A stretch of DNA of 64,000 nt from Macrostomum hystrix. Lineage: Eukaryota; Animalia; Platyhelminthes. Of this stretch, positions 7,519 through 40,304 are shown in pieces. The stretch is taken from assembly GCA_950097015.1 (NCBI GenBank), contig CATNEN010000007.1, positions 558,001 to 622,000 on the forward strand, written 5' to 3'. A program made the position numbers and the translations under genes. Every line of letters starts with the position of its first letter. Positions within the stretch are counted from its first letter, which is position 1. Under the pieces are notes generated by a model. It was not told the origin of the DNA and did not search any database. It worked only from the letters and a program-made list of their open reading frames with translations.

Positions 7519-7557
7519 ACTTTCTATCAGCTGTACTCACAGTTTTGGTGGGTGTCG

Positions 7558-8226: not shown

Positions 8227-8757
8227 CTCACAAACGACGGACAAACCGAATAACGACAAAAATTGCTGTGATGACTTTCAATTTCTAAGGAACTTGTAAA
8301 TTCGGTTGTCGCGGCAGCTGACGGGACTTTGCTTTTAGCCAATTACAACAGCTCGCTTTACTGAATTCTGAACCAATAAGACTGCATTGCTTGTAAGCTA
8401 AAGTCAGGTAGTCGCTGATACTAAATCTACCACGTATGTTAAAGTACCTAAATACCTCCGATTTACACAAGTCATTTGTTTTAATGTTAAGTGTCTACAG
8501 AGCTATTCGTTTTTTAGTACTTCCAGCTCAAAACCCGTTAGTCCCATCATATCATATCATTTTTCAGATAGAAAAGGCCTCCCTACAGTTATACCGCACA
8601 GAAAATCTGTTGAAATTCGCTTTTAATTAACAAGCCCGCATGGATATCTGTTTCCAGCTACAGCTGTGCCTCATCTGCACCATCGGTGCCGTCCATCGCT
8701 GTAAGTGTTGTTACAGTTTAAAGGTTTTTCTTTAAAATGGAATGCAATACATAGGAG

Positions 8758-8880
8758 TAACAACAACAACAACAACAAAGTACGCTGTCAGGTGGAAAAG
8801 GCAGCGTCACAGTGCATGCTTCAGAGCCTGGGCGCGAACAAAGGCCGCACCGCCGGCAGTGTCCGGCAGTGTCCGGCAAT
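8758..8880 (-). mobile_element. Short 3' fragment of an RTE-like LINE with (TTG)n tail
   Basis: The minus strand encodes GAAFVRAQALKHAL*, homologous to the end of the 15924-16500 element; (CAA)n on the plus strand. Confidence 0.75.
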
Positions 8881-8899
8881 ATTCCTTGCAGTGTACTGC

Positions 8900-11800
8900 A
8901 AGGAATATGCAGTAGACTTTCTGACTGATGTGTAAAATGCGAGTCGTTTATTTTAACGAGAGAAAAAACTTCTTTTTGTAGTCAAATGCATTTAAAGCAT
9001 TAATTTCATATGCTAGAATAAATATTAAGAACTAAATATGAGCACATATGAACAGTGAGTGCAACATGGCGATAAATAAAGGTCTTAGTGACAAGAAGAG
9101 ATGTACAGTATCCGACTTTACTGACTGCCAATGAACCATTTCATAAAAAAACAGCAAAATGCAAGAAACAATTTGTAGAAACAAATGTAGATTTGAGGGT
9201 AGCAGGACGAGGAAACAGACGAAGAAACATTGGTTTTAAATTGGCGAAAAGAACTTCCGAAGTTAAGCTTAACGGAACAACGTAGCAAAACCGAGACAAA
9301 ACTGATTGCAGTTTAGGCAAATTGTCCCCTTGTGTGTACTGTGATGTGCAGTAACTTTTATGATCCAACCAAATATAGTTTTGTCTCTTTAAGGAAATGC
9401 GGAACAGTTTGCGACCGACAATAACTCAGACACATTCGAAACACATCCTATGATTGTTGCTTCAGTAGTTATTCGCAAGCCACTCCTCGAAACAGGGGCT
9501 GGGACAAAATGCAGGGGCGCTTGGGCACTCGGTGCAGCAGAAAACAGTGCATTTTGCGTTGCCCCTGCTGTAGCACACGCGACAGCGCTTTGTCGGTCTT
9601 GGATGCGCAATTTGCTGGACATATCTTTTCAGCGAGTGCACAATCAACATGTAAACATGGGCACAGCAGCTGCGCAGTTTAAATGCTGGTACTGGTTGTG
9701 AGTAATATTATCTAGAGTTCCTGTTGTTGTAAAAATATTGTAGCCTTTGTTTTAGCTTTTAGAAGAGATACAGAGATTAAATTGGTTTACCAATGTCCTA
9801 TGTTCGTATGCGATTGGAATGTGCTGCATGTGCTTGTTGTACAGTAATTCTAAATTGGCTTTTAGTGTTCACAGATAAGATTTTAGTGAATGGATTTAGA
9901 CTCATTCAGATTGCGCACGCGATTGCTGAGTGACCTTCAGGTTGCAAAGGAGTTGAGGTGAGGTGAGGCTCAAAAATATATACAAGCTAAATTGAAAAAG
10001 CAAAGCTAAAAATTCATTTAAGAAATTTTATTTAGCAACTTTTCGTCAGCCAATGGTTTCGCTAACCATAGCCAGAACCTCTCTTGGTCTGATTTCATTG
10101 GGTAGGTCCGAAGTAGGCAAACTGGCGAAACGTAAACCTTAAATAAGTGAAAACTGTTCAATTCCATAGGACAATACCTCGTCACTTTCAATAAAACCTA
10201 CTGCTTCACTTTGTCGCAAAGCAATTAAAAGTTTATCATAATTTCTTTATCTTTCTAGGTAGACTTTCAGACTCAGCTGGAATCCATTAGCCTCCTTATC
10301 GATGGATTTCAGGCTGATGCTAACCTGCAGCTGTATGATCTGCATCTTCTCTGGGTGTGAGCTTTTCATTCAGGTTTTGAGCTGCTTTTGAGTTTCAGCT
10401 GTTGATCCATCGGTAGCTCGCAACAGCTACGAAATCATCGAAATTCCGTAAATGCATCCTCACCTGTTACTCATTCTTCAGGCAGCGGCTTCATCGTCAC
10501 CAAAGCCGAAATCGCCGACACCTGGCAGTCGTCCTGGCTCGAGAGCGACAGTCGCTGCTTCCGCCACTCATCGGCCAGACCTGGCGATACGGACTTTTTT
10601 CACTCCAGCAACACTCCGGACAGCTCGGGCTACCAGTGGCTGCTGCTGAAGCTGAGCCGCTGTGTCCGAGTGCGCTCCGTCACTGTCTATGGGAGGCCGG
10701 AGGGTGCGCAAAAGGCAAATTTGATTCAGCCTCTTAGCTACTCGATCATAATTAGTCTTGTAGAGTCTTCAATGTCCTATCAAACTATTGACACCACCTC
10801 ACAATGCCAGTATAATTCAACTTTTTATTGTATTGGCTTTCAAATTAGGTTGCGTTTTGTAAGTTTGATACTTAGAATTTTTTCAGTAATGGTGTCTTCT
10901 TCTCCAGTTCCTGCCAGTGAAAGAGTCAGGGCCCAGGGCATTGAGGTGCTGCTCAGCGACCAGCAACCGGTCGGTCTGACTGAGAATCCGCCAGGCTGCA
11001 CAGCGAGCTTCACTCACAATGTGACCGGATTTCACCTGTGCGGCTCCACCGGCTACTCGGAGAAGCCGGGCTTCGAGTACAAAGTGAACTGCACGGATGG
11101 GAATCATGAAAAGGTTTGATCTGCTTGGTGCAATGTTGGTACATTGTTGGTGCATTTTCCAATAAAATAATATTTTTATTGATTGCAGATGACCCAGTTT
11201 GTACTGCTCAGGAAGTTCGTAACCAAACAGACTAATGATAAGCACATGAACTTCAGACTTCTTGAAATCGATGGAGGTGTGTCATTTTACCCTTTATTTG
11301 ACTCTCCAAAAATTTATAAATTTTACATAATGAAATTATTGCTTACTTTTTCATCTATTTCATAAACTGAGTTTTAAAAAATGTTTTTCAACATCAGTCA
11401 GAGTTTTTTCATTTTCAGAACAGTTCTGCATAAGCGATAGTGCCGGCTGCACAGACAAGTCATTGTTCCTATTGAAGCCCAACGAAAATGTCATGATCAG
11501 AGCATGGCGGCCGTGTGGCAGCCAGCCAGCCAGCACCAACTGCAGCATCGAACTGCCTGACGGGACAGTCAGACAACTGACAATTGTATGCTCCTTGCAT
11601 TTGCATTGTGTGTACTCGTACATTGTGCGAATTCCTAAACAACAGGTCGAGACTGTTTGACATTTCAGATGAGCCGTAACACCGAGTATGCGATCATAAA
11701 ACTCACCAATGTATCATTTGAACTTCACGAATCGACTCTGCAATGTCATCCCAGCTACGCCAATGGGACGTCAATCGAGACTTCACAACTTCTTGGAGTC

Positions 11801-13392
11801 TTCGGTGCGATTGCTTAAAAATCCGAGATATATTGTAACTTAAAGCTCTGCTGCTCCATGTTATATTTTCTGGACTCAAGATGACTCATACCCATTGACC
11901 CCTCAACGAATACATTTTGCACATGCAACTGATTTTACAAGGAAACTAAATTGATTCCAATTTCTGATTCATTTTAACTGCGGTATTTTAGTGAAATCAT
12001 CAAAATCCGACATCGACTTGAACATCACGAAGTTCTGGGTTGTGGGACGGACAGCAGTGTTTACATTCATCACTGAAGGCTCGTTCCCGATGCCAGTGCA
12101 CAGGTGCTGGCTGGTGAATGCTTCTGGTTGGCCAATGAACTCTGTGCTCCCTAAAATCTCAGTAAGAGAGAAATTTCAGTAAGAAAGAATCTCATGTATT
12201 GGAATATTTTATCAGGAATAAAATAGTAAGCTTAATAGTAAGCTATCATCTTAAGAACGGCAGTGTCAATAAGAAGCCACCATTTTCAGAAAAAGAACTC
12301 CAGCAATGGTTTGTTAATCAATCTGAGCACAAACTTCAGCGTGTCTGTAGAGGCCACCCTCGAAGGGCAATCTTTGCATTGTGTGTATCAGGTAGCTGGT
12401 TCAAAAACAAGCGTCAATAAAAAGATCCCCAGGCTACTGAGTAAGCTTTCAACGATTGGCCTGAAAATAAAAGCATTAAATTAAGTTTCTTTAAACCTTG
12501 AACCCGATGCCTTACAGAGCGCTGTGACACGCAGTTTCACCTGAAGCCATCAGCCAGCTGGATTGACGGGCAAACAACAGTCGTGACAGTCGACTCATCA
12601 GATGAGGTCAGAACTGGTGGAGGAGGAGCTAATGTGACATCAGCCAAAAACTAGGTGCCAACAAGCCATGCGTGTGTCATTCAAGACGATGGAAACAGAT
12701 CGCTGCCGATGCAGCTTGTTGAAGTGAGTTGCAGGAATTCATTTTCTGGAACTCATGTTAAATTTTCACGTGAACTTTTAGTAACAACGAAAAACAATAT
12801 CAATAGCACAATTTACATTTCCGAATTGTTTAAAATGAGCAAATTATTCAACTGAAAATAATTGGTATTATTTCAGAACAGCAACATGAGCAGCACATTC
12901 TCGGTGAATGTGAGCAGACACTGGGGCAGCTCAGCATCGATTGCGTGCCTGGTTAATCAGTCAGGACTCATCGAGACCTGGGCTCATCACAGACTGCCAC
13001 CTGTGCTGTGTGAGTTTATAGTGTTTTTGTGCAGAAACCCTTTAACTTATACAAATAGGCTTTATGCACATTTATTGCTCTTTTACATATAATCACACAT
13101 ACATAGACTGTCACAATGCATTTGAATACGCATTCAGTTATAAAGCTGGTGCGTAAAAGGCTGGACTGTTAAATGTTTATTCATATACACAGTATTCTGT
13201 GATTCAATCTATCTGTGACATTCAAACTGCGTAGTTCAAGTAATATCGTAGCGAAAATTATCAGAAGCTGTTAGATTTCTTATGTGATAAGCTCGCTTTT
13301 ATAAACATTTTATTGATACCTTGCAACACAACATGAGTTATCTGAGACGTGATCACAAAAGTTATGCTATTGAGCATGTTTTATGACATCCT
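8900..13392 (+). repeat. ~4.5-kb segmental duplication, copy 1 (copy 2 at 32149-36630)
   Basis: Continuous high identity from AAGGAATATGCAGTAG to ATGACATCCT, covering introns and 9 exons. Confidence 0.95.
9462..9650 (-). mobile_element. piggyBac-like transposase C-terminal cysteine-rich domain remnant (also 32717-32905)
   Basis: KRCRVCYSRGNAKCTVFCCTECPSAPAFCPSPCFEEW matches the CxxC...CxxC...C..PCF pattern. No catalytic DDD domain is seen nearby. Confidence 0.6.
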
Positions 13393-14045
13393 TACGAGTA
13401 GTCAGACACACCGAGACAGATGCAGGGAACTCGTACACTGATAGCACTTGACGTAACGGATTGTTAAAATTTCAAAGACTCAATGATTAGACTAAGCTAG
13501 GACTAATCAAGACGGGATACGAGACTCATGAAGAGGAGCGAGGAAGCGGTGCTTCTTTATAGGCAGGGAGTGCTAAGTTAGAAAGGACGTGATGGAATCA
13601 CGAGGTTTCTAAAAAAAGCAACTGACGTCAGTGGCGCGCAAACGTCACTCCTACGTAGGCTCTGACTCATAATTGGGGTACCAAGTGCAGTAAACATGTT
13701 TACTGAACTTTTAGAAGACAAAGAGAGGCCAGTCACGCGAGACGAAACACGCGATGGCTGGACGTCAGACAGGCACACACAAGAAGGGTGGCAGGGAGAA
13801 CAAAGAGACGCCAGCGTGGGACGAAAAGGTGATGACTCATTCCTTGCAGGGGGAGAAAGCACACTCAAAGTGCAGGCGCGGCCAAGGGGGACAGTCAGGC
13901 AGAGAGGGACAGACCAGTCGGCGCCAGAGAGAGGCGGGCTGGGCAGTCGCTCAGTGCCAAAGAAAGGCACCTAAGCTACCTAAGCAGGTAAGGCAACTGA
14001 CAGCTAGTGAGACACCAATAGGCCTCTAAGCAGTGGCTCACTACG
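13393..14045 (-). mobile_element. Partial LTR related to the solo LTR at 17899-18837
   Basis: Colinear similarity from CTTTATAGGCAGG (13555) to GCAGTGGCTCACTAC (14044). It starts exactly at the duplication breakpoint. Confidence 0.8.
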
Positions 14046-15923
14046 TTTTGTACACTTGTACCATTTTAGTCACTTATAATTGAGGTCAGAATCTCAGAAC
14101 AGCTCAAATTCCTTGGCCCGCAGTCGCTTCAAACAACATCAGCTGGTCCGGTGGGCTGCTCAACGGTTCTGTGCTGAATCTCACGGGGACAACAGCGGAG
14201 GGAAATCCGAGGCCTGGGTTGGACTGCTCACTCAAGACCAGGTCAGTCCTTATCGAGGGAATCGAGGTGAGTCGGAAAAGACTTTTGGCTATCCGAGTCG
14301 TTTTAAAACTCCCAACTTATGAAGTCCCATTTTTTAAACATGTACTCTTTCATGCACTGATCAGGTGATTATAGAGCCCGATGAGAGAGGCAGCAACGGA
14401 GGCTGGGTTCGGACAGCTCGGCTGTTCCACCGATTCACTGAGCAGCAGTCTGAAGTCACAGTCAGCTGCAAGATCAGCCAAGCTCCGTTCTCACCTGTTG
14501 AGAGCACAAGGACTTTTCCAGCTGAGTTCCCAAGGCCACCGAGCAGTACACTTTGCTCCTTTGCGACCGCCAATGGGAGCTCTCCATCGAGCGGATCGGT
14601 GACCATGGTTGTCTTCTGCTGCTCGCTGGCTGCAGCTGCCGCGATCTCCGCCGCGATCTCCGCCGTGGTCACCTTCGCTGTGCTGAAGCGGATGCGAGCT
14701 GCCACCAGCCGCCGAAGCGAGCCTGTGGAGATGCTAGTCAGACAGGCGCAGGTCGAGGTCAAGCCGCCTGATCCGAATGTGAGTAGAGATGCTCATAGCT
14801 CTCAGGTGTTGAATCGTTTGAACAGCATGAATCGAACTGCCATTCCAGACTGTGTACTACGAGGCCTAGAACTGCGAAGTGATCGACAGCTGCGATCTGG
14901 CGCTGACTGTCTGAGTTGAAAGTGAGTGTCACCTCAAAGTGAAAATTGGAAGGAGGAGTGTTCCAAGTACGCCTTTAATGGTTCAAAACACTTGTGCCGA
15001 TTGTAGACTTGATCTTTATGGTCTGTAAGCGTGCACGTCGTGCGATGCTTTCGGAGGTCAATGACCTGTTGGCCACCCCTGCGCCTCGCCCCTCTCTGCC
15101 CCCGCCCATCCGCGCCACCACCTCCCTGTTCTGTTTATTGGCCTGTCTGCCTCCCTAGCTCGCTCACCTGTTTGTTCCGGAGGTAGAGAATAATAATATT
15201 TTTCTTTAACTGCTTGCTTACTCTTCCTTGCCATTTGTGCCGCCCCCAATTTCCCTAGTTTTAAGGCCTTGCTCACTTCTAGTGCTCTAATTTGGCCTTT
15301 ATTTGTTTTGTGTCGCAACTATATTCGGTTGTGATTCCGCATCAACTCGTACCTTAAATACGATTGCATAGGCCCCCAATTTTAAACAGTGGGGTCTCGC
15401 CTTGTGCGGCCCGGTCTCATCTCCACTTGCAGTCTGCTTTTGTCAGGTGCGCTACCATGGAATTAATGCACTACTTCAAAGCTGATCTCCTAGACTGAAC
15501 GGCCCCATTTAGATACTCATGGGTAAAATTAACTATGTTCAATCCGTCACTATCCAAGGAAGCTAATAATATTATGCAGTTTTATGTCGAAAGTTTTAAC
15601 TTTAACTCGTTTAGTCTCAACAACTCACAGCAATAAATCATTAATCAATGCTCATTTAACTAATTACAAGTAATTACAAGTACAAGTCTATACTTGTATA
15701 TTCAGTATCAATGAAGTCATGTTAATGCGGCTTGTGTATTTCTATGAGTGGTGGTTGCTTTTCAATGTAAAACAAGTACATCCATGTATCTAAGAAATGC
15801 TATTTGAATCACTTCAGTGTATTACTGTTACCTGCATGTAAAGCATAAATAAAAAATGTATTCGGTTCTTTGCTCGTTTATCTTGCGAAGTCCAAAAAAC
15901 GGACTTAGGCTTTATGTGTTACC

Positions 15924-16500
15924 CAACAACAAACAACAACATAGTACGCTGTCCGAGTCTAGTACAGCGTCACAGGGCGCGCTTGAGGGCCTGGGCACAA
16001 ACAAAGGCCGCGCCACTGGCAGAGTCTGGAGCGCCGGCATCATCTAGCAGGCAGTCGACGTAGCGCCGGGTACGCGCTTGTCCTCGCCGGTAGGGTGCTT
16101 GTACCGTGAGCAGCAGGACCTCCTGCACCGGCTCTGGGCAGTACGACTCGGCGCGGATGACATGGCTTGCGAGCTGGAGTCGCCGATGGCGCATAAGTTC
16201 GCTTGGCCGGGCCAGGCCGGCGCGGCGGTAGAGTGCCGCATTGGAGACTCGCTGGTCGCCGATCTTGAAGGCAGCGTGCAGCAGGCCAGAGTGCGCCGCG
16301 TCGACCTGATGTTCAAGCGAGTCCGTCAGCGTCCAGGTCTCGGCGTTGTACAAGCGGACGGTCTCGATCACCGCCTGGAACAACGCCGCCCTCTGACGGT
16401 CAGGTAGGGCCTCGGACTGCAGAACGGTCCTCACGGAACGAAAGGCCGCCCATGCAAGCCCGCGGCGACGCCGCAAATCGTCACGAGCGTCGGGTACCAG
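15924..16500 (-). mobile_element. 5'-truncated RTE-like non-LTR retrotransposon
   Basis: Post-RT region DDLRRRRGLAWAAF...LFQAVIETVRLYNAETWTLT...RRLQLASHVIR, a short 3' UTR with a stem-loop, and a (TTG)n tail. Confidence 0.8.
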
Positions 16501-16590
16501 ACGGGTTTAACTATGATTTTCTAAATTACCGGTTCTAGTGTAACGATAATCAATAAAGAAAAAGTTTAAAGGAAAGATACTAGATAAATG

Positions 16591-17258
16591 TGTTGTGTCC
16601 CGAGACGGCCCAGCCGGCTTCGCCTATCGCTCAGGACGAGCAGGGAGGTTCAGCACTTCCGTCCTACTATGTGTCGGCCTACTGTCGCACTAGACGCACA
16701 GGCAGTAAGCCGGCAACCAAGGTCGCAACGAATGCACAGGCCCTGGTGACAAAGTCCTAGTGACTGAACCCCAACAGACAGAGGCAGAACGCCACTTACG
16801 TGGGCTAGCAGTTCTGGTTTGCGCTCGGGAGAGCTGGCTGAGTTGATGTATTTTCCAGAGTAGGCTGTGGTTGGAGTGCTCAAACAAAACCAAAACAGTC
16901 TCGCCAGAGGTGAACGAGCGCGCGCACGCCAATAAATAATACCTGCTCACCCAGGGGGGCTAAGCTGCAGGGTAGACAAACAGCATGTGAGAGAACTAGT
17001 TGCAGCCTCGCCAATCACGCAGGGTCAATAAGACAACTGGGCGAGACGCGAACCAATGAGAGGGCAGGAACGAGAGATAACAATAACTGGGGTACGCAAA
17101 CGTCTTGGCTCAACCAATCAGACGCCAGGGGTGAGAGAAATTGGTAGGCAGGTAGGCGCAGAGCACAGACAGGAGCAGGGGGTAAGCGACTCAAAGTTCA
17201 ACGCGACAGTGAAAGGGCACCAAAAATACAGTACATAGAAAACGAATAAATCACAACA
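16591..17258 (+). mobile_element. Solo LTR (668 bp)
   Basis: TGTTGTG...CACAACA 7-bp inverted termini, 4-bp TSD AATG (16587-16590, 17259-17262), and AATAAA at 17245-17250. Confidence 0.85.
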
Positions 17259-17687
17259 AATGACAAATAAGTGAATCGCAAATCAATGAAAATTGAGCCG
17301 CTGTTAGTTCTAGTCATTCCAGTTTTCTTTGATTCTGTCTGCAACAATCGTGCAGATATTTGTAAACAAGGGCATGTTATCTGGGCATGATGGCGCTAGG
17401 AGATAGCAGAAAGGACATTTTTGTGTGTGCTGTTCTTGCTAAGATTGGTGACACTCCGAGACCACTCATCAAGGCAGGTTGCAGTAAAGGATTAACGAAT
17501 ATGACGCGATTTTTTTTCTTGCGGGGGCAAAAACAAGCACACACCCCCGACCAAAGCCGCAGCGCACCCAACCCAAAATCCAATAGAAATAAGAAAAACA
17601 ACTAGAGGTAAGGTCAGGTGGGCTTCTGGGGGGCTAGCGTGGGGCGACTGACAAAACGCGGTTGACCATTGGCCGCAGGCAACCCCC

Positions 17688-21420: not shown

Positions 21421-21698
21421 CCCTGATCGGACCGGTGGATCGGATCGGATCGGTGAGCTTCGCGCACCGATTGCGCCTCTAGTTTACATTCATTGAGCTT
21501 TAAAAAAAAACTCACATCTCCCGATTTTCAGAGTGTATAAGACTTAGAAATCTGAAGGGAATTCAAGAGAGCTCTAGGATAAAACTAGGCCAAAAATAGC
21601 AACACCAGAGAGGGCAAGCAACTGAAAGCAGAAAGATTAGACAAAGATTCGCCCCGAGTTCACCTATTCATTTCAGAGCAAACCCGGTCCGGCATGGC

Positions 21699-21809
21699 CG
21701 CAGCTGTGCTGACGTGGAGCCGCCTGAAATCGACACGCAGCTGTGTTGACGTGGAGCCACCTGAAATCGACCCGCAGCTGTGCTGACGTGGAGCTGCTGG
21801 AATCGACCC
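21699..21809. repeat. 37-bp tandem repeat, 3 copies
   Basis: CGCAGCTGTGCTGACGTGGAGCCGCCTGAAATCGACA starts at 21699, 21736 and 21773. Confidence 0.9.
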
Positions 21810-25369: not shown

Positions 25370-28300
25370 ATGAACTTCCGACTGCAGCTTCTGCTGTTAT
25401 TTAGCTGCACATTCAGCTGTGTTTACTGCAGTAAGTATTCTTAGCAATCAATTTTCAGATTTGAGACTTTTAATACGCAGGTTGTTGTATTTTGATTAAC
25501 TGGGACGATTCGAGTATTGAGCTACAAACTCAGCTTGCACACATCTGTTGTTTATGAAAAACGAGTGAAAATTCCACGCTAACCAGGCCTAAAGAGTTCA
25601 TTCATAGAATTGCAAATATTTTACAGCTAAACTGCTGATACCTTTCTCGACCGGTAACCCCAAAGCAAAACCTGCAAATCCTCGTCTCTGTTCACAAAAT
25701 AAGTAAAAGGGATTTCAAATTTAGCAGGCAGCAGCTTCAACGTCACCGAAGCCGAAATCGCCGACGCCTGGCAGTCGTCCAGGCTCGAGAGCGACAGTCG
25801 CTGCTTCCGACACTCATCGGCCAGACCAGGCCAGTTTGACTATTTTCACCCCAGCGACACTCCGGACAGCTCGGGCTACCAGTGGCTGCTGCTGAAGCTG
25901 AACCGACCTGTTCAAATAAAATCGGTGACTGTCTATGGCCGAACTGACTGTAAGTTACCGAGCAGCTCCAGTTTTTGTGCGTCCGGAAAACTGTAAATTG
26001 AGAAGATTTCCTAAAAACTTCCTTAAACTCACTTCAGCTCCAGAACAGGAGAGGATCAGAGCTCAAGGCATCGAGATTCTGCTCAGCAACAAGAGGCCGC
26101 ATGGTTTTACTGAGAATCCACCTGCTTGCACATCGAGAATCACTCCCCATGTGTGTTTGGATTTCACCTGTGCGGCTCCATCGGCTATTCAGAGGTTCCG
26201 GGTCGGGCATACAAAGTGAACTGCACAGATGTAAAGGATTCCACGGTGTGTAAGCTTTCTTGCTACCAATATTTCTGTTTTGAATTTTCATGTGCGAGCG
26301 TTGCAAACCTCACTTTCCATGAGTTAGTGCTGCTGAGAAAATTCTTGGGCAACCAGACTGACAAGTACATGAACTTCAGGCTTCTGAACATTGAAAGTGA
26401 GTTTCAGTGCTCTGTTCATTGCAATGGTCACATTTTCAATGGCATTGATCGCTGACCCTTGATAAAACTTCAGCCGCTGACTTCTGCTTGTCATCCCAGA
26501 ACACCTGCTCTGAGACAAAACTGTCACTTCTCAAACCAGACGAAAGGCTGATGATAAAGGCGTGGCTGCCTTGTCACAATGTGACCAGTGCATCAACATT
26601 CAGCATGAAAAGTGCGAACGGGACCGTCTTACCTCTAAAGACTGTACGCGTTAGTTTTGACAATCAAAGTTTCTAGTTTGCAACAATTGAACTGAAGGTT
26701 CCCATCATTTTGTGCTCCGTTCATTGTAGAAATCTGCGATGAGGGAATTCATTGTTCTCCAAGAGTTCAACATGAGTACGGAATTTCACGGAGCTTTGCT
26801 GCAGTGCCAGCATAATTGCAGCGATGGGAGTCAGCTGGAGACATCCCGGAAGCTCTACATTTTCGGTTTCTCATCATCTACTTTTTTAGCTTTAATTTTG
26901 AACAAAAAGCTTCTTTAGTATATTGAAGCATAAAATTGGTCATTTAACTTCACTCCATCCCGAATTTGGTGCCAGTGAGCCCCAAGGCTTACAGTCTGGA
27001 TATGAATGTCACGAAGCTCTGGGTTGTCGGCAAGCCGGCATTTTTCACATTCAGCACTGAAGGCTCGTTCCCTCTGCCTGTGCACAGGTGCTTCTTGGTC
27101 AGTGCAGCTGATAAAACTAATGAAAATGACAAACTTTCAGACTACCGGGAAATGGCGCCACTCTCTGTGAGTAGCTCAACGAAATTCAAAGTCGGTGGCC
27201 AGATGTAGTCTAACGTGAATGAAATATGAGCGCTAATGAATCGCTTCGAATGATTTCAGTGAGTCTCGAATTTGAACTTGAATTTCTCCAAACAGCAATG
27301 TTGGGTAATGACAGACCAGACTGACAAAGGCATCATGGTTGAAAACCAGCTGATTGAAAAGCTGTTAATTTCAAGAAAATCCAATGAAAGGATTATTGAA
27401 ATACGAGTATAATACTAGAATTTGGTTTTCAACTCAGTGGATAAATTTTAATTATACACTGCTGACAATGCAACAAACTTTTTCTCTTATCATTTATAAA
27501 TGAGGCACCATGACTGCCGCATATTTGATTGTGGAGTAAATTTTCAAGCAGTGAGCGGTTTGACTTTAAGTCTATAAGAGTCTCTGGATTTCGATTCACA
27601 TCGTTTGAATTTCCTTGCTGTAAATCCTTACTTTACCGTAATTTAGATACTCGTAAAATTTAGCCTGGTGAATCAGTCAGGACTCCTCGATACCTGGATC
27701 CGTCATCCACTGCCTGATGTGCTGTGTGAGTTCTTTGCTAATCTATTCGTTTTAATTCGTAAATAAGGACTATTCGGTTCTTATTTAGTTCTTGTTCATT
27801 TCATTTCTTTTACATGTTTTGCTTTACGATTAACTGAATATTATATTTAATTGACGTTTAATTTCCTTGCCAGCGTAATTTATTCAATGCTTACTTTCAC
27901 AGACCCAGCAAAAAATTTCGATCAAGCTACCGCTTAAGGAGTTACAAGCAGGAGTTCCTGCCAACTTCACCTTGCAAATCTCCGAGCCAGGAAATCCACA
28001 TGCTGTGCCCAGCTGCTCAGTCAGTGGTAGAAGTCTCACGCAGCTCAAGGTAATTCTGAATTAAGGGTGGCTAAAGCAATGACCAACTCAAGAAATTACT
28101 TTATATTATTTATTGGTATGAATAATAAGTCTGTCCATATATTCTGCTAAATGTCTGCTAAATAAAGTACATTTTGAATCCCATCTGACATGATCTCATT
28201 TTGTCGCGGATGGACAAGTTGTGTTGAGTACTCTGTTTCGGTTTTGAAAAGAATCTCATAAATCTGGAAGGTATGGAGCAAAAAAAATGATGTTCAGCAG

Positions 28301-30435
28301 AAGCAGCACAATGGAAATCTTGAAGAGAGAGTCTTGTCGGATTCCGGTGGACATGAAGTGCAGGAAATTAGCAAGGACAACTTAAGAACACCTAAGAACT
28401 TAAGACAACTTAACAACTTTAGTGCTCTTAAGTTGTCTTAGAAAATGAGTCGCTAGTTGTTTACTGAAACTTTTACTCTTCAACAGAAAGAATCCTTCAT
28501 AATCGAATGCCTCGTCCGTGTGGACCATCAGCGCCCTGGTCACTGACAACAAGAAGAGCATCGCCTGCCACGTTGTACAGACTACAAAGGTGCTGTTCCA
28601 TCCGCATAGACAGGGCAGCACCATTCAGTGCTCAGCTAAGCAAACTCTAAACTCACAGACCGTGTTCAACAGCAGCACCGCAGTGGTCTTTCAAGTGAAC
28701 TGTGAGACCAAACTCACTGTGTTGTCTCTGCTTCTGGTTGAACTTTGTTATAAGCATGCCAGACAGCTGAGTGCTGATCATCTGATTACAGAAATGGCCA
28801 ACAATTCTCTGCTGATAAGTCCAAGTTCCGGGATCGCTGAAGGCAGCATCCTGAACGTCGCGCTCGAGTCAGCTGGTGGCAGACCAACAGTCAGCGAACT
28901 CGAGTGCTTTGTATGAGATCTCAGACTCTCTGAGAACAAATCTCATGTACGTACTTTGCTTGTTATCTTCATCAACTGGTTCTTTTGTGACTAGCTCATT
29001 CGTTTGCTTTCCTACAGACCAGAAATGTGACGGAGAAATCGACAAGATAAATAATTTCTGGCTTCAAGCCTCGTGGGTGCACCATGAGAAGATACTCATG
29101 TGCAAATTCGAGCAGGACAAAGTTCTGCGGATGCCCTTTACATTTTCTTTTGGAATTGAGGAGTTCTGACTCTCATTGTTTACTGTAAGCTGATGGTTTT
29201 AAGCGATTTAAAACGACCCAACTCGCATGTGGCTGAAAAAGTTGCTCTAAGAAATTAAGAAATTCAAAACTGATTTTAGACAAGCCAAACGTGATGCTGT
29301 CCGAGCCGAGCTTCAACGGAAGCCACTTTGATGGCACCCTGCGTCTGTCAGGTGGAAACCCCATGCCGGAGGCGGAGTGCTTTGCGAATGGCAATTCTTC
29401 ATCCTTAGTAGGCGAACGTTTCATGAGGCCTAAAATTGTTCCTCTATCTCGCTATTTGAGTACAGTAGTTGAGTCGATGCCTAAAACCATTTTGATTCCA
29501 GATCTTCAGAAACGAAATCTCAAACCGTTCGGTTCTGCTTGGCAATGCGACTCACGCATTAGCATTTGTTCACAATGAGCAAATTCCTTTCATTGAAATC
29601 TCTTTCATGAAGCATAGTTTATATGTGAAGCAAGCAAAGGCTCAAGTATTCACAGCTTATCTTGAACTACACACGATAGCCTCACATCAGGAAAATGCAG
29701 AAATAGGTAGAACAAATGAATATCATTACATTATGAACAATTTATTAATGGATTTGGTGAAGCATATGGAAAATTGAAGCATTCATTCTCATGAAAACCT
29801 CAGCTGAAATGCCTCAGCTGATCGCCACGCCTAACCATGAGCCACAGAGGTCCATGTGGCCTCTGTTGTCCCCGCTGATTCTGCTGCCGCTGCTGCTCAT
29901 CCTCGCAGTGCCTGTTTGGCTGCATCGCCGCAGACTCAACTCGGTTCGGCTACCGATGGCCACCTCGGCTGCGGCCTCTAAAACCAGAAACGAAGAGCGC
30001 CCGTTCAGCCCTGGAGCTCGAGCTGGAGTATAGAAAGTCGCACTACCTGTACCAGGTAATATTTTCTATCGTCACTATGAGCTCGTAAACGGCCTTCTGT
30101 GAAAATCGAAGAAAAAAGGACGTTTTGCAATGTCTAGTAAAATACAGGCGTTTATAAACTGAATGTAATGCAATCTTTCATTTTGCACTTGAAGAATGAT
30201 GCAATGAAGAATCCACAGGCTTCTTAAACTTTGCAACCGAATAGCTTCTCCGTCAGCAGCCGCATCATGTTCCTCATCTTCGCGCCACATCCTGCATTTT
30301 TACCCGCAGAACTTGAGCAACACGGAATACGCCACAGTTGTGGGCTCGGTGCCCGGCCTCTCGGACAGCTGGGAGACTCTCTACTTGCCAATTGTTGGCC
30401 ACCTGGATGAGGAAGGCCACCTGGTGACGGCTTGA
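25370..30435 (+). pseudogene. Locus B: divergent lectin-Ig-TM-ITSM receptor paralog with multiple lesions
   Basis: Leader 25370-25430 and exons 25728-25949, 26730-26865 and 26976-27097 have the same lengths as in A/C. Lesions: +2 frameshift near 26153, weak or absent acceptor near 26320, apparent loss of exon 9 and half of exon 10, +1 in an A-run near 27910, TAA at the 28791 junction, frameshift near 30003. TM WPLLSPLILLPLLLILAVPVWL. Last exon 30310-30435 (NTEYATVV...TLYLPI). Confidence 0.8.
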
Positions 30436-30799: not shown

Positions 30800-30908
30800 A
30801 TATTCCCCATTTATTTTGTTGTCTAGCGGGCAAAAGCAAGAGGTGTCTCGTTTATGATCGAGACACCGAGTGCTTTTGGCCCTAGACAGCTAAATGAGTG
30901 GGGAATAT
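30800..30908. other. Imperfect ~110-bp foldback palindrome
   Basis: Nested arms ATATTCCCCA/TGGGGAATAT, TGTCTAG/CTAGACA, CAAAAGCA/TGCTTTTG and GGTGTCTCG/CGAGACACC around an 8-nt loop. Confidence 0.8.
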
Positions 30909-32148: not shown

Positions 32149-35100
32149 AAGGAATATGCAGTAGACTTTCTGACTGATGTGTAAAATGCGAGTCGTTTAA
32201 TTTAACGAGAGAAAAAACTTCTTTTTGTAGTCAAATGCATTTAAAGCATTAATTTCATATGCTAGAATAAATATTAAGAACTAAATATGAGCACATATGA
32301 ACAGTGAGTGCAACATGGCGATAAATAAAGGTCTTAGTGACAAGAAGAGATGTACAGTATCCGACTTTACTGACTGCCAATGAACCATTTCATAAAAAAA
32401 CAGCAAAATGCAAGAAACAATTTGTAGAAACAAATGTAGATTTGAGGGTTGCAGGACGAGGAAACAGACGCAGAAACATTGGTTTTAAATTGGCGAAAAA
32501 AACTAAAAAAAACTTTTAAAAAGTTAAGCTTAACGGAACAACGTAGCAAAACCGAGACAAAACTGATTGCAGTTTAGGCAAATTGTCCCCTTTCTGTGAT
32601 GTGCAGTAACTTTTATGATCCAATCAAATAAAGTTTTGTCTCTTTAAGGAAATGCGGAACAGTTTGCGACCGACAATAACTCAGACACATTCGAAACACA
32701 TCCTATGATTGTTGCTTCAGTAGTTATTCGCAAGCCACTCCTCGAAACAGGGGCTGGGACAAAGTGCAGGGGCGCTTGGGCACTCGGTGCAGCAGAAAAC
32801 AGTGCATTTTGCATTGCCCCTGCTGTAGCACACGCGACAGCGCTTTGTCGGTCTTGGATGCGCAATTTGCTGGGCATATCTTTTCAGCGAGTGCACAATC
32901 AACATGTAAACATGGGCACAGCAGCTGCGCAGTTTAAATGCTGGTACTGGTTGTGAGTAATATTATCTAGAGTTCCTGTTGTTGTAAAAATGTAGTAGCT
33001 TTTGTTGTAGCTTTTAGAAGAGATACAGAGATTAAATTGGTTTACCAATGTCCTAAGTTCGTATACGATTGGAATGTGCTGCGTGTGCTTGTTGTACAGT
33101 AATTCTAAATTGGCTTTTAGTGTTCACAGATAAGATTTTAGCGAATGGATTTAGACTCATTCAGATTGCGCACGCGATTGCTGAGTGACCTTCAGGATGC
33201 AAAGGATTTGAGGTGAGGTGAGGCTCAAAAATATATACAAGCTAAATTGAAAAAGCAAAGCTAAAAATTCATCTAAGAAATTTTATTTAGCAACTTTTCG
33301 TCAGCCAATGGTTTCGTTAACCTGAATTCATTGGGTAGGTCCGAAGTAGGCAAACTGGCGAAACGTAAACCTTAAATAAGTGAAAACTGTTCAATTCCAT
33401 AGGACAATACCTCGTCACTTTCAATAAAACCTACTGCTTCACTTTGTCGCAAAGCAATTAAACGTTTTATCATAATTTCTTTATCTTTCTAGGTTGACTT
33501 TCAGACTCAGTTGGAATCCATTAGCCTCCTTATCGATGGATTTCAGGCTGATGCTAACCTGCAGCTGTATGATCTGCATCTTCTCTGGGTGTGAGCTTTT
33601 CATTCAGGTTTTGAGCTGCTTTTGAGTTTCAGCTGTTGATCCATCGGTAGCTCGCAACAGCTACGGAATCATCGAAATTCCGTAAATGCATCCTCACCTG
33701 TTACTCATTCTTCAGGCAGCGGCTTCTACGTCACCAAAGCCGAAATCGCCGACACCTGGCAGTCGTCCTGGCTCGAGAGCGACAGTCGCTGCTTCCGCCA
33801 CTCATCGGCCAGACCTGGCGATACGGACTTTTTTCACTCCAGCAACACTCCGGACAGCTCGGGCTACCAGTGGCTGCTGCTGAAGCTGAGCCGCTGTGTC
33901 CGAGTGCGCTCCGTCACTGTCTATGGGAGGCCGGAGGGTGCGTAAAAGGCAAATTCGATTCAGCCTCTTAGCTACTCGATCATAATTAGTCTTGTAGAGT
34001 CTTCTATGCCCTATTAAACTATTGACACCACCTCACAATGCCAGTATAATTCAACTTTTTATTGTATTTTCTTTCAAATTAGGTTGCGTTTTGTAAGTTT
34101 GATACTTAGAATTTTTTCAGTAATGGTGTCTTCTTCTCCAGTTCCTGCCAGTGAAAGAGTCAGGGCCCAGGGCATTGAGGTGCTGCTCAGCGACCAGCAA
34201 CCGGTCGGTCTGACTGAGAATCCGCCAGGCTGCACAGCGAGCTTCACTCACAATGTGACCGGATTTCACCTGTGCGGCTCCACCGGCTACTCGGAGAAGC
34301 CGGGCTTCGAGTACAAAGTGAACTGCACGGATGGGAATCATGAAAAGGTTTGATCTGCTTGGTGCAATGTTGGTACATTGTTGGTGCATTTTCCAATAAA
34401 ATAATATTTTTATTGATTGCAGATGACCCGGTTTGTACTGCTCAGGAAGTTCGTAACCAAACAGACTAATGATAAGCACATGAACTTCAGACTTCTTGAA
34501 ATCGATGGAGGTGTGTCATTTTACCCTTTATTTGACTCTCCAAAAATTTTTAAATTTTACATATTGAAATTATTGCTTACTTTTTCATCTATATCATAAA
34601 CTGAGTTTTTTTATGTTCTTTAACATCAGTCAGAGTTTTTTCATTTTCAGAACAGTTCTGCATAAGCGATAGTGCCGGCTGCACAGACAAGTCATTGTTC
34701 CTCTTGAAGCCCAACGAAAATGTCATGATCAGAGCATGGTGGCCGTGTGGCAGCCAGCCAGCCAGCACCAACTGCAGCATCGAACTGCCTGACGGGACAG
34801 TCAGACAACTGACAATTGTATGCTCCTTGCATTTGCATTGTGTGTACTCGTACATTGTGCGAATTCCTAAACAACAGGTCGAGACTGTTTGACATTTCAG
34901 ATGAGCCGTAACACCGAGTATGCGATCATAAAACTCACCAATGTATCATTTGAACTTCACAGATCGACTCTGCAATGTCATCACAGCTACGCCAATGGGA
35001 CGTCAATCGAGACTTCACAACTTCTTGGAGTCTTCGGTGCGATTGCTTAAAAATCCGAGATATATTGTAACTTTAAGCTCTGCTGCTCCATGTTATATTT

Positions 35101-36630
35101 TTTGGGCTCAAGATGACTCATACCCATTGACCCCTCAACGAATACATTTTGCACATGCAACTGATTTTACAAGGAAACTAAATTGATTCCAATTTCTGAT
35201 TCATTTTAACTGCGGTATTTTAGTGGAACCATCAAAATACGACATCGACTTGAACATCACGAAGTTCTGGGTTGTGGGACTGACAGCAGTGTTTACATTC
35301 ATCACTGAAGGCTCGTTCCCGATGCCAGTGCACAGGTGCTGGCTGGTGAATGCTTCTGGTTGGCCAATGAACTCTGTGCTCCCTAAAATCTCAGTAAGAG
35401 AGAAATTTCAGTAAGAAAGTATCTCATGTATTGGAATATTTTATCAGGAATAAAATAGTAAGCTTAATAGTAAGCTATCATCTTAAGAACGGCAGTGTCA
35501 ATAAGAAGCCACCATTTTCAGAAAAAGAACTCCAGCAATGGTTTGTTAATCAATCTGAGCACAAACTTCAGTGTGTCTGTAGAGGCCACCCTCGAAGGGC
35601 AATCTTTGCATTGTGTGTATCAGGTATCTGGTTCAAAAACAAGCGTCAATAAAAAGATCCCCAGGCTACTGAGTAAGTTCTCAACGATTGGCCTGAAAAT
35701 ATAAGCATTAAATTAAGTTTCTTTAAACCTTGAGCTCAATGCCTTTTAGAGCGCTGTGACACGCAGTTTCACCTGAAGCCATCAGCCAGCTGGATTGACG
35801 GGCAAACAGCAGTCGTGACAGTCGACTCATCAGATGAGGTCAGAACTGGTGGAGGAGGAGCTAATGTGACATCAGCCAAAAACTGGGTGCCAACAAGCCA
35901 TGCGTGTTTCATTCGAGACGATGGAAACAGATCGCTGCCAATGCAGCTTGTTGAAGTGAGTTGCAGAAGTGGATGTTCTGAAACTCTTATGTTAAATTTT
36001 CTTAGGAAACTTTTTATAACAATAAAAAACAATATTTTCAATAGGATCGTATACTTGCGAATTGTTGGAAACGAACAAGTTATAGAATTAAAAAAAGAGT
36101 TGGTAATATTTCAGAACAGCAACATGAGCAGCACATTCTCGGTGAATGTTAGCAGACACTGGGGCAGCTCAGCATCGATTGCGTGCCTGGTTAATCAGTC
36201 AGGACTCATCGAGACCTGGGCTCATCACAGACTGCCACCTGTGCTGTGTGAGTTTATAGTGTTTTTGTGCATAAACCCTTTAACTTATACAAATAGGCTT
36301 TATGCACATTTATTGCTCTTTTACATATAATCACACATACATAGACTGTCACAATGCATTTGAATACGCATTCAGTTATAAAGCCGGTGCGTAAAAGGTT
36401 GGACTGTTAAATGTTTATTCATATACACAGTATTCTGTGATTCAATCTATCTGTGACATTCAAACTGCGAAGTTTAAATAATATCGTAGCGAAAATTATC
36501 AGAAGCTGTTAGATTTCTTATGTGTTAAGCTCGCTTTTATAAACATTTTATTGATACCTTGCAACACAACATGAGTTATCTGAGACGTGATCACAAAAGT
36601 TATGCTATTGAGCATGTTTTATGACATCCT
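32149..36630 (+). repeat. ~4.5-kb segmental duplication, copy 2
   Basis: Matches 8900-13392. Confidence 0.95.
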
Positions 36631-39600
36631 CACAGAACATCAAAGCCAATACGAATTTCAGACCAGCCAAATCCTCCAGCAGTCATCGGCTTGGCAACCA
36701 AATTCTACGAAGGCATCGGCGTGAACTTCTCTGTCAGGTCAGGTGAAGCGAATCCGAGAGTCTCTCACAGCTGCTCCACAGAGCACGGCCTGATTGTGAG
36801 TCACCATAAATATTTCTGCTGCTACTCAAATACTAACACACTGCATACTAACACACTGCACTGACACTGGTCTTCATGCATTCCAGGAAGTCGTCAGTGA
36901 ACCCTCGACCTCTCTTGACTCAGCAACCGAGATGAGTTACAAGCCTGACAAGCGTGACAGCAGAGTGCGCTGCTCAGCCGTGCAGACCTTCCAGTCGCAG
37001 GTCGTGTTCAACTACAGCTTCGAGCACAATGTCAGCGTCAACTGTGAGAAGTTTTCGCCTATCCTGAGATGACCTTCGGGGTTCAAAGTGTTTGAAATGT
37101 TACACAATACACCCCGGTTAAATAGAGAAAAGTTGAGTTTCCTATCTATCATTTTGCATAACGCATTTATTGAGTCTACTCTGTGTTGCAGACAAGGCGA
37201 ACAACACAGTGCTGATCAGCCCTCGTGACTGGTCCGTGGAGGGCCGTGTCACCAACGTCACTCTGGTCTCAGTGGGTGGCAGACCCGCTGTGCGACACTC
37301 CGGCTGCTGGGTTGGCGACAATGAGCTGTTCAGCTCGAGTGTGAGTGCAGCAATCACTTCGCTACCTAAAGAGAGCACTTGTTTCACTTTCCTCAAGCAA
37401 AGCCCATAAAAACAATGACAGGAAAGAGCTTTGGCCAATGCTGAATCAGATCGGAGATCCGAGCAGCATCTTTGGCTTAATGCATCAAGAAGGCACAATG
37501 GAAAGACTCTCAAATGCAAATTCACACAGGACGAGAAACTCATTGAGTGGATTGAAAATTATACGTTCAACGTTTTTTGTAAGAAATTTCATTTTCTGAG
37601 GCCAGTGCTTACATTTTGATATCAAATGGCCAATCAGTTTATAGGTCTTCCTAAAATTCTATGTCCAATCTGAAGCAATCGAGTGAACACATTCGTTTAA
37701 GTCCTCTATTTATTGTATTCACTAACTACTTTCAGTATTTTATGAGATTGCTTGACTTGACTTGACTTGACTCCCTAGTGATTCAGTTCTCCCTGCTGTG
37801 AAAGGGAACCAGCATCAACTGGGGTAGAAATTCAAGTTGGTGTGGCGGCCAGCCCAGTCCACGGACTGAACAGCTGTTCAGTCAGCCTTTGGAAGCGGCA
37901 AGCAGCAGCAATAGCTGCTGCTGTCACTGCCTGTGCATCTGCCCCAACTGGGCTAATGTATCATTCTATAATTCTATACATTATAATTCTATAATTTATA
38001 AAAAATTCGTACTGAGCATTTAAATAAGTGTTTGTTTGAGTTCTATTTGTTTAAGTTCTAGTTTTTTGTAAAGTGCATGCGGTGCAGCCAATAACAGTAG
38101 TAAGACCACGGTGGCTTTCATGTACTCACATCTCGCTTTTTCTGTATCTCCCAAAATATTCGAACAATCGCCATCAAAATCCAGAAAACTGACCAGAATT
38201 TCGCGTGAAGTTTTCGTGGAGCTGTCCTGAAGTAGGCAGTGGGTATTTCAAATACTCCGAGGTCCTTACCCACCGGGAAAATAGCGTGCTCTTTCTACTG
38301 TAAATTAAAAAACTGATAATAAAAAGATTTTAACTAACGTTGAATTCGCGCATTCCAATTCATTTCCAGATGAAGCTGCAGTCGCTTCTATCCGACTGTT
38401 CAGTAAGAAAATACGAAGCGGTTCGTTGACTAAATTTTCGCTTGAATCTTCCCATCAGGGAAATCCACCTGCTCAACATGAGTGCTCTATTTCTGGAAGG
38501 AATCTTAGTCTCATCTTGGTGAGTAGCATTGTGATGATTTCCTTGTAAGAGTGATTGTACAAGCCTTGACCAATCTTTCAGCCTCCGTCTAAGCCCAATG
38601 CCTCATCGAAATGGGAGTTCACACCATTGGTCAGTGACAATGGGAAGAGCATCAGCTGCCGTGTACTGCAGGTAGCTGGTAATGAAGTCAAGTTCAACTG
38701 GTCAGTCAACAGCGAGCCACTCGATGTGCTTTGTGAGTGTGGATTTAAATACTTTAATGATTTATCACCACGCTCACAAGTGACCAAGCCAAAGCCAATT
38801 TTCTCGCAGATGCATCCAACAGCTCCTGGAATGCGACTCAAGCATTTCTAATGAAGGAAGGCGAGTCCATGTCTGTGCGGATGAGCTCAGTCGATGGCAA
38901 CCCAAGCACGACTCACCAGTGCTGGCTACAGACAGCTGAAAACGGTTCGATAAATTTGACTGCCACACCGACGGAAAGTGCAAACACTTCACAGTTGAAA
39001 CTGAGCAGAACTTTCGGCATTAGATTGACGAATCGCATGAATGCCGGTGTGCTGACGTGTCGAGCATCTCAGAAGGGTCTCGAAGATCTGGACGTTGTAT
39101 TCAGACAAAACATTACTGTCTATTGTAAGTTGATTTCATAGCTTCCAATTAGAAAAACTGAAGCACTCTTTTAACGTCTCCTTCAATTATTTTCACCCAG
39201 ACGCTGCTAACGCGAGTCTGCTGGAATCATGCTTCAACGGGACATATTTTTATGCCAACCTAAGCTTGTCGCATGGCAACCCATCACCAGTTGCCAACTG
39301 CACCATTGATGGACGAATTCCGGATGCTTTCGTAAATCCGTGGACCACTTTTGAAGTTTGCTTTCCCCGAGACACAAAGCTTTTCATTTGCTATAATTAC
39401 ATTTCAGAATCTGACTCAAAGGGCTGGTCTATTTCAGAATTCGTCCTATTCCGTCAGCCATAAACTGGATGAGTACAAGGAAACTATTAATATGACATGT
39501 TACTACCTGCAGGTGGGAACAGTGAACTACTCGAGAATTCATAGCTGGTTACTCAATTCTACAGGTAAAGTCACCAAAAGGCCTATTTTGTTTTTAACCA

Positions 39601-40304
39601 AGCAAAGCTGCTCAAAATTTATGTTTCATCTTTTGTCGTATTTTGCAGGAAATTTTTCGCGTCACGATGGCGTGAGCTCAGAAGACTTAAAGGCTAAAGG
39701 CTTAATTTACCTAGGTTTCTTGCTGCCGCTATTGTTTCTATTGTTGGTCTTGGTTGCCGTGGCAACCAAAGTGCTGCTGCGAAGGCAAGCGGCAGTCCAT
39801 CAGGTTGTCATCCGGCCCAGGCAATCAGCTGAAGTTGCCACTGACTGTCGCACGTCGCTCGAGTTGGAGCAGGTGTTCAGAAAGACGCACTACCTGTACA
39901 AGGTGGGCATGGTTAATCGTGCGTGCACACTCACATCCTCATCCTCATCCTCATCCACATCCTCGTCCTCACCCACATCCTCATCCTCATCCCGATCCAT
40001 ATCCACATCCACATCCACACCCACATCCTCATCCTCATCCACACCCACATCCTCATCCTCATCCTCATTCTCATCCTCATCCTCATCCACATCCACATCC
40101 AGAATCCTACACATCCTGGTGTGTATGCCTAATCAGACCTGGCTGTATTTTCTCTTCTCTTCATTTCAGGAACGCGCTGGTATGGAGTACGCCACAGTTG
40201 TCGGGCCAGGTACATCAGCTCCTGGTCTGTCGGACAGTCAGGACACAGTCTACGAAGTAATTGTTGGTCACATCAATGAGCAAGGCGAGCTTGTCACGAT
40301 TTGA
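33716..40304 (+). CDS. Locus C: type I membrane receptor with F-type-lectin-like domain, 8 Ig-like domains, TM and ITSM-like tail (~1.1 kaa; leader exon not located)
   Basis: Exons 33716-33937, 34142-34347, 34423-34510, 34651-34817, 34901-35036, 35224-35345, 35522-35672, 35750-35955, 36115-36247, 36662-36795, 36887-37043, 37192-37340, 37422-37578, 38370-38518, 38582-38732, 38810-39124, 39201-39355, 39408-39564, 39649-39902 and 40170-40304. All are GT-AG, phase-consistent and without stops. Ig motifs include WEFTPLVSDNGKSISCRV. TM LIYLGFLLPLLFLLLVLVAVA. Tail MEYATV and TVYEVI. Confidence 0.85.
38218..38298. repeat. Dispersed ~80-bp repeat, inverted copy at 44798-44877
   Basis: GAAGTAGGCAGTGGGTATTT...AAATAGCG..CTTTCTAC is present in opposite orientations at the two sites. 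Confidence 0.75.
39932..40100. repeat. (CATCCT/CACATC)n microsatellite in the last intron of locus C
   Basis: Seen directly, between the donor at 39903 and the acceptor at 40169. Confidence 0.95.

What the first reader, a model, noticed from the sequence alone, without database searches (positions are those of the whole stretch)
8640..40304. Tandem family of lectin-Ig-ITSM receptors: a Siglec/CD22-like design built on an F-type lectin domain
Seen: three paralogs share exon lengths (61, 222, 136, 122 nt) and encode an F-type-lectin-like N-terminal domain followed by Ig-like domains and a TM; A and B have identified leader exons. Locus C has 8 Ig-like domains and a short tail with tyrosine motifs, and B has a similar tail. 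Established: Siglecs pair a glycan-binding N-terminal domain with C2-set Ig repeats and ITIM/ITSM motifs. Inference: this is a convergent invertebrate glycan-sensing inhibitory receptor family evolving by birth and death. I do not recognise this architecture as a named gene.
Basis: partly seen in the sequence, partly recalled or inferred. Interest (0 to 1): 0.85.

Follow-up and report, generated by a model that had tools for sequence, protein, structure and literature searches.

The report
Flatworm fucose-lectin-headed Ig receptor cluster
A Macrostomum-type flatworm carries one intact, transcribed gene and two broken neighbours for an undescribed cell-surface receptor with a fucose-lectin-type head, a stalk of eight antibody-like domains and a tail with phosphatase-docking-type tyrosines; it is built like vertebrate Siglecs from different parts, but its ligand and role are untested.

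Summary
Observation largely confirmed. Spliced RNA contigs show 16 of its 20 joints (one corrected). A Macrostomum lignano homologue of the head folds as an F-type lectin with the His/Arg/Arg triad aligned; the stalk domain tested is Ig, closest to nephrin/kirre-type domains. All true homologues are M. lignano proteins; one has an ITIM plus ITSM. Corrections: B is a pseudogene; A is a broken chimera (recent copy of C's 5' half with a stop, joined to an older, tyrosine-free TM end). New here: in one RNA run a C-type stalk is spliced to A's membrane-proximal exon, suggesting two receptors with near-identical ectodomains and different tails (paired-receptor pattern; one contig only). Not a Siglec, not a nephrin/kirre orthologue. 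Glycan binding, SHP2 recruitment and an inhibitory or immune role are inferred only. This scan already reported the same family at about eight other loci of this genome.

The parts
33536..33590 (+).
   Evidence: Leader scan; homologous to A and B leaders, 0-2 of 2000 shuffles; joint to exon 2 not tested on RNA
33716..34510 (+). Gene C exons 2-4 (33716-33937, 34142-34347, 34423-34510): F-type-lectin head with His, Arg, Arg triad
   Evidence: (joints 2-3 by loose end, 3-4 direct)
34651..39564 (+). Gene C exons 5-19: eight Ig-like domains (exon pairs 5+6, 7+8, 9+10, 11+12, 13+14, 15+16, 18+19; exon 17 at 38810-39124 is one whole domain)
   Evidence: Open, phase-compatible, all GT-AG; RNA joints; exon 17 folds as Ig, pLDDT 81
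39649..39902 (+). Gene C exon 20: transmembrane helix (mean hydropathy 2.9, no charged residue) and proximal tail
40170..40304 (+). Gene C exon 21: tail with MEYATV (40182) and ITSM TVYEVI (40245), tyrosines 21 residues apart, then stop
   Evidence: dN/dS against B 0.24; RNA contigs run on about 305 nt beyond the exon-20 donor, joint itself not displayed
8640..8700 (+). Older 61-nt leader exon of locus A
8900..13395 (+). Locus A 5' block: recent copy (96% overall, exons 98.7%) of C 32149-36633, with second leader 10302-10356, head, three Ig domains; in-frame TAG at 12652
13396..14060 (.). Retroelement-end fragment (80% like 18363-18840) lying where seven stalk exons are missing from A
14124..14919 (+). 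Locus A 3' end: divergent membrane-proximal Ig (14124-14266, 14365-) and Ala/Ser-rich TM; possible donor at 14778; no tyrosine in the read-through tail, no tail exon found
   Evidence: acceptor 14124 used in RNA run X3, joined to a C-type exon 17
25370..30435 (+). Locus B, pseudogene: leader 25370-25430, head, partial and re-ordered stalk, TM exon 29804-30055, tail exon 30310-30435 with ITSMs TEYATV (30322) and TLYLPI (30376); frameshifts near 26155, 27910 and 29970, stops at 28500 and 28914, truncated exon at 27664

Best explanation
C is one expressed member of a Macrostomum-specific family of single-pass recognition receptors. A long stalk of eight nephrin/kirre-type Ig domains holds an F-type lectin head away from the membrane; the head binds fucosylated or related glycans on microbes or other cells through its His/Arg/Arg site; clustering leads to phosphorylation of two tail tyrosines about 20 residues apart, which dock a tandem-SH2 phosphatase (SHP2/corkscrew type) and damp or tune a cell response. 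The cluster turns over by duplication, exon shuffling, 5'-half copying between neighbours and decay. Shown: gene structure, splicing, folds, decay of A and B, purifying selection on the tail. Inferred: sugar binding (about 0.55), SH2-phosphatase docking (about 0.6), recognition or immune role with inhibitory output (about 0.35-0.4).
For: Intact 1,140-aa model with RNA joints. Head: profile hit to fucolectin FBP32 at E 0.0017 with His, Arg, Arg aligned; model's best Foldseek match is eel fucolectin 1K12 and VIA Z 10.0/9.6/9.4 for three F-type domains; His and both Arg kept in A, B, C and most M. lignano homologues. Tail: strict ITSM in C, two in B (shuffle p 0.014), ITIM VVYAQV plus ITSM TEYTEI in a distant M. 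lignano paralogue whose tail does not align to C (p 0.023); TEYATV differs by one residue from the PD-1 ITSM TEYATI that binds SHP-2 (PMC5149523); tail dN/dS 0.24. Multi-copy, genus-restricted, with pseudogenes and shuffled Ig order, as in Hydractinia Alr genes (10.1101/2022.03.04.482883).
Against: Strict fucose motif HX24RXDX4(R/K) and calcium motif h2DGx (PMC5712786) are not met: spacers are 30 and 9, no DG motif. The same fold is used by non-lectin domains (SUN, muskelin discoidin, DDR1) and CBM62 ties for top Z. C's own ITSM is not beyond chance (p 0.32) and its first motif has Met at -2. In this cluster the head is the most conserved part (72-77% B vs C against 39-65% for Ig), unlike an arms-race ligand site. 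No expression-site or challenge data.
Confidence: 0.5

Rival explanations
1. Cell-adhesion or patterning receptors derived from a nephrin/kirre-like Ig protein; the head binds a protein partner or itself (as the F-type-domain protein Furrowed is thought to), and the tyrosines recruit adaptors for junction or cytoskeleton control.
For: Best structural match of the stalk domain is SYG-2 D2 (Z 9.3), also SYG-1 and Rst; profile hits to nectins (E 0.003); conserved head; degenerate sugar and calcium motifs; hydrophobic C-terminus that could bind a PDZ domain (inference).
Against: Many copies, pseudogenes, variable stalk order and genus restriction are unusual for core adhesion genes; basic triad retained; ITIM/ITSM-type rather than Nck-type YDxV motifs (knowledge).
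Confidence: 0.25
2. Endocytic or scavenging lectin: the head captures glycans and the tail tyrosines are YxxPhi sorting signals for AP-2, not SH2 docking sites.
For: YATV and YEVI fit YxxPhi; C's ITSM alone is not beyond chance.
Against: Thr/Val at -2 recurs in B, C and the unalignable M. lignano tail, and the motifs come in pairs 18-27 residues apart, which AP-2 binding does not need.
Confidence: 0.13
3. Reproductive or allorecognition receptors (sperm, ejaculate or partner recognition) in a hermaphrodite; same signalling design, non-immune context.
For: Rapid turnover and many amino-acid differences between the RNA animals and the genome (24 replacement, 10 silent among listed sites); F-type lectins act in fertilisation (PMC5712786).
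Against: No hypervariable head in this cluster; no tissue data.
Confidence: 0.12

Closest known systems
Vertebrate Siglecs (CD22, CD33-related; paired Siglec-5/14 and 11/16)
   Same: N-terminal glycan-binding-type domain, C2-type Ig stalk, single TM, ITIM/ITSM tail; tandem cluster with pseudogenes; 5' halves homogenised between neighbours with different TM/tail ends and null haplotypes (PMC4042635).
   Different: Head is an F-type jelly-roll lectin, not a sialic-acid-binding V-set Ig; no sequence homology found; A's TM has no charged residue for a DAP12-type adaptor; function untested.
F-type lectins (eel AAA, MsaFBP32; mosaic Drosophila Furrowed/CG9095)
   Same: Fold and aligned His/Arg/Arg triad; Furrowed also combines the domain with a TM.
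   Different: Longer spacers, no calcium motif, no vicinal cysteines; partner domains are Ig, which the review's domain-organisation section does not list (PMC5712786).
Hydractinia Alr family and Botryllus fester/co-receptors
   Same: Invertebrate tandem families of single-pass receptors with ITIM/ITAM tails, pseudogenes and exon shuffling (10.1101/2022.03.04.482883; PMC11507803 listed).
   Different: Alr ectodomains are V-set/I-set/Fn3 with no lectin head; no allorecognition assay exists here.
Nephrin/SYG-2 and Kirre/SYG-1/Rst
   Same: Stalk Ig domain is structurally closest to their C2-type domain 2; nephrin also has eight Ig domains (knowledge).
   Different: Lectin head, no Fn3 domain, short tail, multi-copy; no sequence-level hit outside Macrostomum.
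Molluscan Ig-lectin proteins (FREP, CREP, GREP)
   Same: Ig domains combined with a lectin domain in a lophotrochozoan (knowledge; FREP review listed).
   Different: Those are secreted with Ig first and lectin last; here the lectin is first and the protein is membrane-bound with a signalling tail.

Membership tests
Siglec/CD22 | N-terminal V-set Ig domain with the sialic-acid-binding arginine | tested here: not met
   Head folds as a galactose-binding-like F-type jelly roll
Siglec/CD22 | C2-set Ig stalk, single TM | tested here: met
   Exon 17: C2-set_2 clusters at 0.96, Ig fold; TM. Only one of eight domains was folded; the others rest on cysteine pattern and similarity to it and to M. lignano Ig-like proteins
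Siglec/CD22 | ITIM and/or ITSM in the tail | tested here: met
   ITSM in C (no strict ITIM); two ITSMs in B; ITIM plus ITSM in M. lignano P0007
Siglec/CD22 | SHP-1/2 recruitment and inhibitory output | not testable with these tools
   Needs phosphopeptide pull-down and cell assay
F-type lectin | F-type fold | tested here: met
   On M. lignano homologue P0011 (54-63% identical per head exon): top Foldseek 1K12, VIA Z 10.0 to 3CQO, rmsd 2.9 over 114 residues
F-type lectin | Fucose motif HX24RXDX4(R/K) | tested here: inconclusive
   His, Arg, acidic residue and second Arg present and aligned to FBP32/AAA, but spacers are 30 and 9, so the strict pattern fails
F-type lectin | Calcium motif h2DGx | tested here: not met
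   No DG before the His in A, B or C, nor in the aligned homologues
F-type lectin | Binds L-fucose | not testable with these tools
   Needs glycan array
Nephrin/Kirre orthologue | N-terminal Ig domain, Fn3 (nephrin), single-copy conserved orthologue across animals | tested here: not met
   Lectin head, no room for Fn3 in the RNA-confirmed model, homologues only in Macrostomum and multi-copy
Paired receptors (Siglec-5/14 type) | Neighbouring genes with near-identical ectodomains and different TM/tail | tested here: inconclusive
   A and C 98.7% identical over 10 exons; RNA joins a C-type exon 17 to A's exon 14124 in one contig of one run; locus of that transcript not proven
Paired receptors (Siglec-5/14 type) | Activating partner with charged TM residue or ITAM | tested here: not met
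   A's TM is uncharged, Ala/Ser-rich; no tyrosine in the read-through tail; no tail exon found. A decoy role remains possible

The most novel reading that the evidence does not exclude
Macrostomum has independently built a Siglec-like system on a fucose-lectin head, including paired receptors: an ITSM-bearing inhibitory form (C) and a partner with the same ectodomain but a tyrosine-free end (A type, decoy or activating), kept alike by gene conversion and polymorphic for presence or absence, used to tell self glycans from microbial or partner glycans.
Probability: 0.22. Interest if true: 0.85.

Novelty: new variant of a known kind. Interest (0 to 1): 0.57.

Why it matters
Free-living flatworm immune and recognition receptors are almost uncharacterised. 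A large, expressed, genus-restricted family that joins an F-type lectin to an Ig stalk and ITIM/ITSM tails would show that the lectin-plus-phosphatase-motif design arose again from different parts, and Macrostomum offers RNAi, transgenesis and positional RNA-seq to test it. This window adds the longest-stalk type I could document (eight Ig) and a hint of paired receptors with a null haplotype. The general idea (invertebrate Ig receptor families with ITIMs) is already known from Hydractinia and Botryllus, and nothing functional is shown.

Tried and rejected
Pfam per exon gave only sub-threshold F5/8C hits (E 0.04) and nothing for most Ig exons; single-sequence PDB searches found nothing. Word-seeded homologue searches returned only M. 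lignano P0007/P0017 or nothing, so no orthologue of C's TM and tail was obtained. P0005 (5,656 aa) is a spurious hit, a prokaryote-type Big_12 protein. My first model of C exons 18/19 was wrong and was corrected from RNA. Search for a tail exon of A found no homologue of the B/C tail and only weak chance candidates. Assembly-artefact reading of the A/C duplication rejected as unlikely: 4% divergence, different flanks, B and transposons in between; not tested with long reads. Sequencing error as the cause of B's lesions rejected as unlikely because there are at least six of different kinds. Rfam: no hit. The reads stretch was ended at 39929 to stay beside the (CATCCT)n repeat, so the leader joint and the last joint were not displayed.

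Full report
Setting. The window is animal DNA with transposons, a bestrophin gene and a DRC1-like gene. All true homologues of the head are Macrostomum lignano proteins at 42-59% identity, so the source is another Macrostomum species. The scan lists 35 pieces and the M. hystrix assembly has 42 contigs (PMC10468722), which fits but is not proof.

Gene C. Twenty-one GT-AG exons from 33536 to 40304 are phase-compatible and open, giving 1,140 aa. One joint corrected my model (39331 to 39408). Contigs leave the genome at the exon-20 donor and continue about 305 nt, room for the 135-nt tail exon plus UTR, but that joint and the leader joint lay outside the stretch I could lay. A fourth run from another study shows five of the joints. 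The 'no spliced transcript' refutation fails.

Domains. The head is split over exons 2-4, so it was not joined for any search. A natural open frame of A over exons 2-3 scores 0.95 to F5/8C/NedA-like clusters. A profile of the family hits fucolectin FBP32 (E 0.0017) and eel AAA, with His, Arg and Arg in register. The AlphaFold model of M. lignano homologue P0011 (pLDDT 72.5) has 1K12 as best Foldseek match and VIA Z 10.0, 9.6 and 9.4 to three F-type domains, tied with CBM62 and a chitobiase domain. The strict fucose motif and the calcium motif (PMC5712786) are not met: spacers 30 and 9, no DG. Exon 17 folds as an Ig domain (pLDDT 81), scores 0.96 to C2-set clusters and is closest to SYG-2 domain 2 (Z 9.3). 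Seven further exon pairs have the same two-cysteine, phase 1-0-1 layout and cross-match weakly, giving eight Ig domains. Exon 20 has an uncharged TM.

Tail. C has MEYATV and TVYEVI, 21 residues apart; only the second is a strict ITSM, and shuffles match that in 32% of cases. B's homologous exon has two strict ITSMs (p 0.014) and the distant M. lignano paralogue BOX15_Mlig012130g1 has ITIM VVYAQV and ITSM TEYTEI (p 0.023) in a tail that does not align to C. The tail exon has dN/dS 0.24 between B and C, the gene 0.32. TEYATV is one residue from the PD-1 ITSM that binds SHP-2 (PMC5149523). Together this makes SH2 docking likely but not shown.

A and B are broken. B has frameshifts in exon 3, in a stalk exon and just after the TM, two stops, a truncated exon and a re-ordered stalk. 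A is a chimera: an old leader (8640), then 4.5 kb that copies C's promoter region, leader and exons 2-10 (exons 98.7%, introns 95% identical; 13 amino-acid changes, 4 silent, one stop at 12652), a retroelement fragment where seven stalk exons are missing, and an old, divergent last Ig and Ala/Ser-rich TM with no tyrosine tail found. M. lignano homologues use the same Ig modules in other orders. Birth and death with exon shuffling is therefore supported.

A paired-receptor hint. In run X3 one contig ends at C's exon-17 donor and continues with 29 nt that match A at 14124 with one mismatch, just after a canonical acceptor and in the right phase; no other place in the window fits. The last 80 nt of exon 17 occur in two versions at about equal depth, while exons 7-16 mostly collapse into single contigs and the stop of A is not listed among the differences. 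The simplest reading is that the sequenced animals express two genes with nearly the same ectodomain, one ending C-type (ITSM) and one A-type, and that this genome carries a broken A. That is the Siglec-5/14 pattern (PMC4042635), except that A's TM has no charged residue. It rests on one contig; a chimeric allele or a paralogue elsewhere would also explain it.

Mechanism. Most likely a glycan-sensing recognition receptor that signals through a tandem-SH2 phosphatase (0.5). Rivals: nephrin-like adhesion (0.25), endocytic lectin with YxxPhi signals (0.13), reproductive or allorecognition role (0.12). Against an arms race at the ligand site in this cluster, the head is its most conserved part and exon 3 is almost invariant in the RNA, although listed RNA differences elsewhere are mostly replacements (24 to 10; two gene copies are mixed in that count).

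Comparison and novelty. Not a Siglec (head fails), not a nephrin or kirre orthologue, an atypical F-type-domain protein. I found no paper describing F-type lectin plus Ig plus ITSM (the library is incomplete and the main survey of F-type architectures was not read). Invertebrate Ig receptor families with ITIMs are known (Hydractinia Alr). Earlier notes of this scan report the same family at about eight other loci of this genome, some with two Ig domains, hypervariable heads or two tail classes; they are unchecked AI notes and I used them only as context. Verdict: real, expressed, undescribed domain combination; new variant of a known kind; interest 0.57.

Noticed in passing
window 2831-7892: Intact Ty3/gypsy element: one 1,417-aa gag-pol ORF, 336-bp LTRs 99.4% identical, 5-bp target duplication GTTTG; very recent insertion 750 bp upstream of A's old leader.
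   Followed up: partly
window about 16500-22100, minus strand: Retroelement with overlapping ORFs and an RT (Pfam RVT_1 at 19628-20350); ORF text at 18633-19217 resembles a DIRS/Ngaro tyrosine recombinase but had no Pfam hit. A fragment of its end sits inside locus A at 13569-14048.
   Followed up: partly
window 48799-59168: 446-bp direct repeats (99.3%) look like LTRs of an integrase-bearing element into which a LINE (endonuclease, RT, RNase H; 52291-57621, minus strand) is nested.
   Followed up: partly
window 57782-58318: 5.5 near-perfect copies of a 97-bp unit at the 5' side of the LINE, like tandem promoter monomers; no Rfam match.
   Followed up: partly
window about 41900-44400, minus strand: Bestrophin gene, tail-to-tail with gene C (Pfam E 5e-15).
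   Followed up: no
window 60763-63356, plus strand: DRC1/CCDC164-like gene (NYD-SP28 domain split over 60763-61158 and 61256-61912), with long open frames.
   Followed up: no
window 220-1310: Exact 545-bp tandem duplication containing a 12-bp G-rich satellite; possibly an assembly duplication.
   Followed up: no
window 37764-37897, 38191-38366, 40435-40614: Short interspersed repeats in C's introns and 3' flank that are present in many other transcripts (loose ends).
   Followed up: no
window 39934-40100: (CATCCT)n repeat in C's last intron; it creates a spurious His-Pro open frame (39351-40304) that is not part of the spliced gene.
   Followed up: yes
L001 4223-15969 (M. lignano): The distant paralogue with ITIM plus ITSM (804 aa, four Ig-like modules) stands next to a poly(A)-binding-protein gene, with no called paralogue within the fetched 26 kb.
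   Followed up: partly
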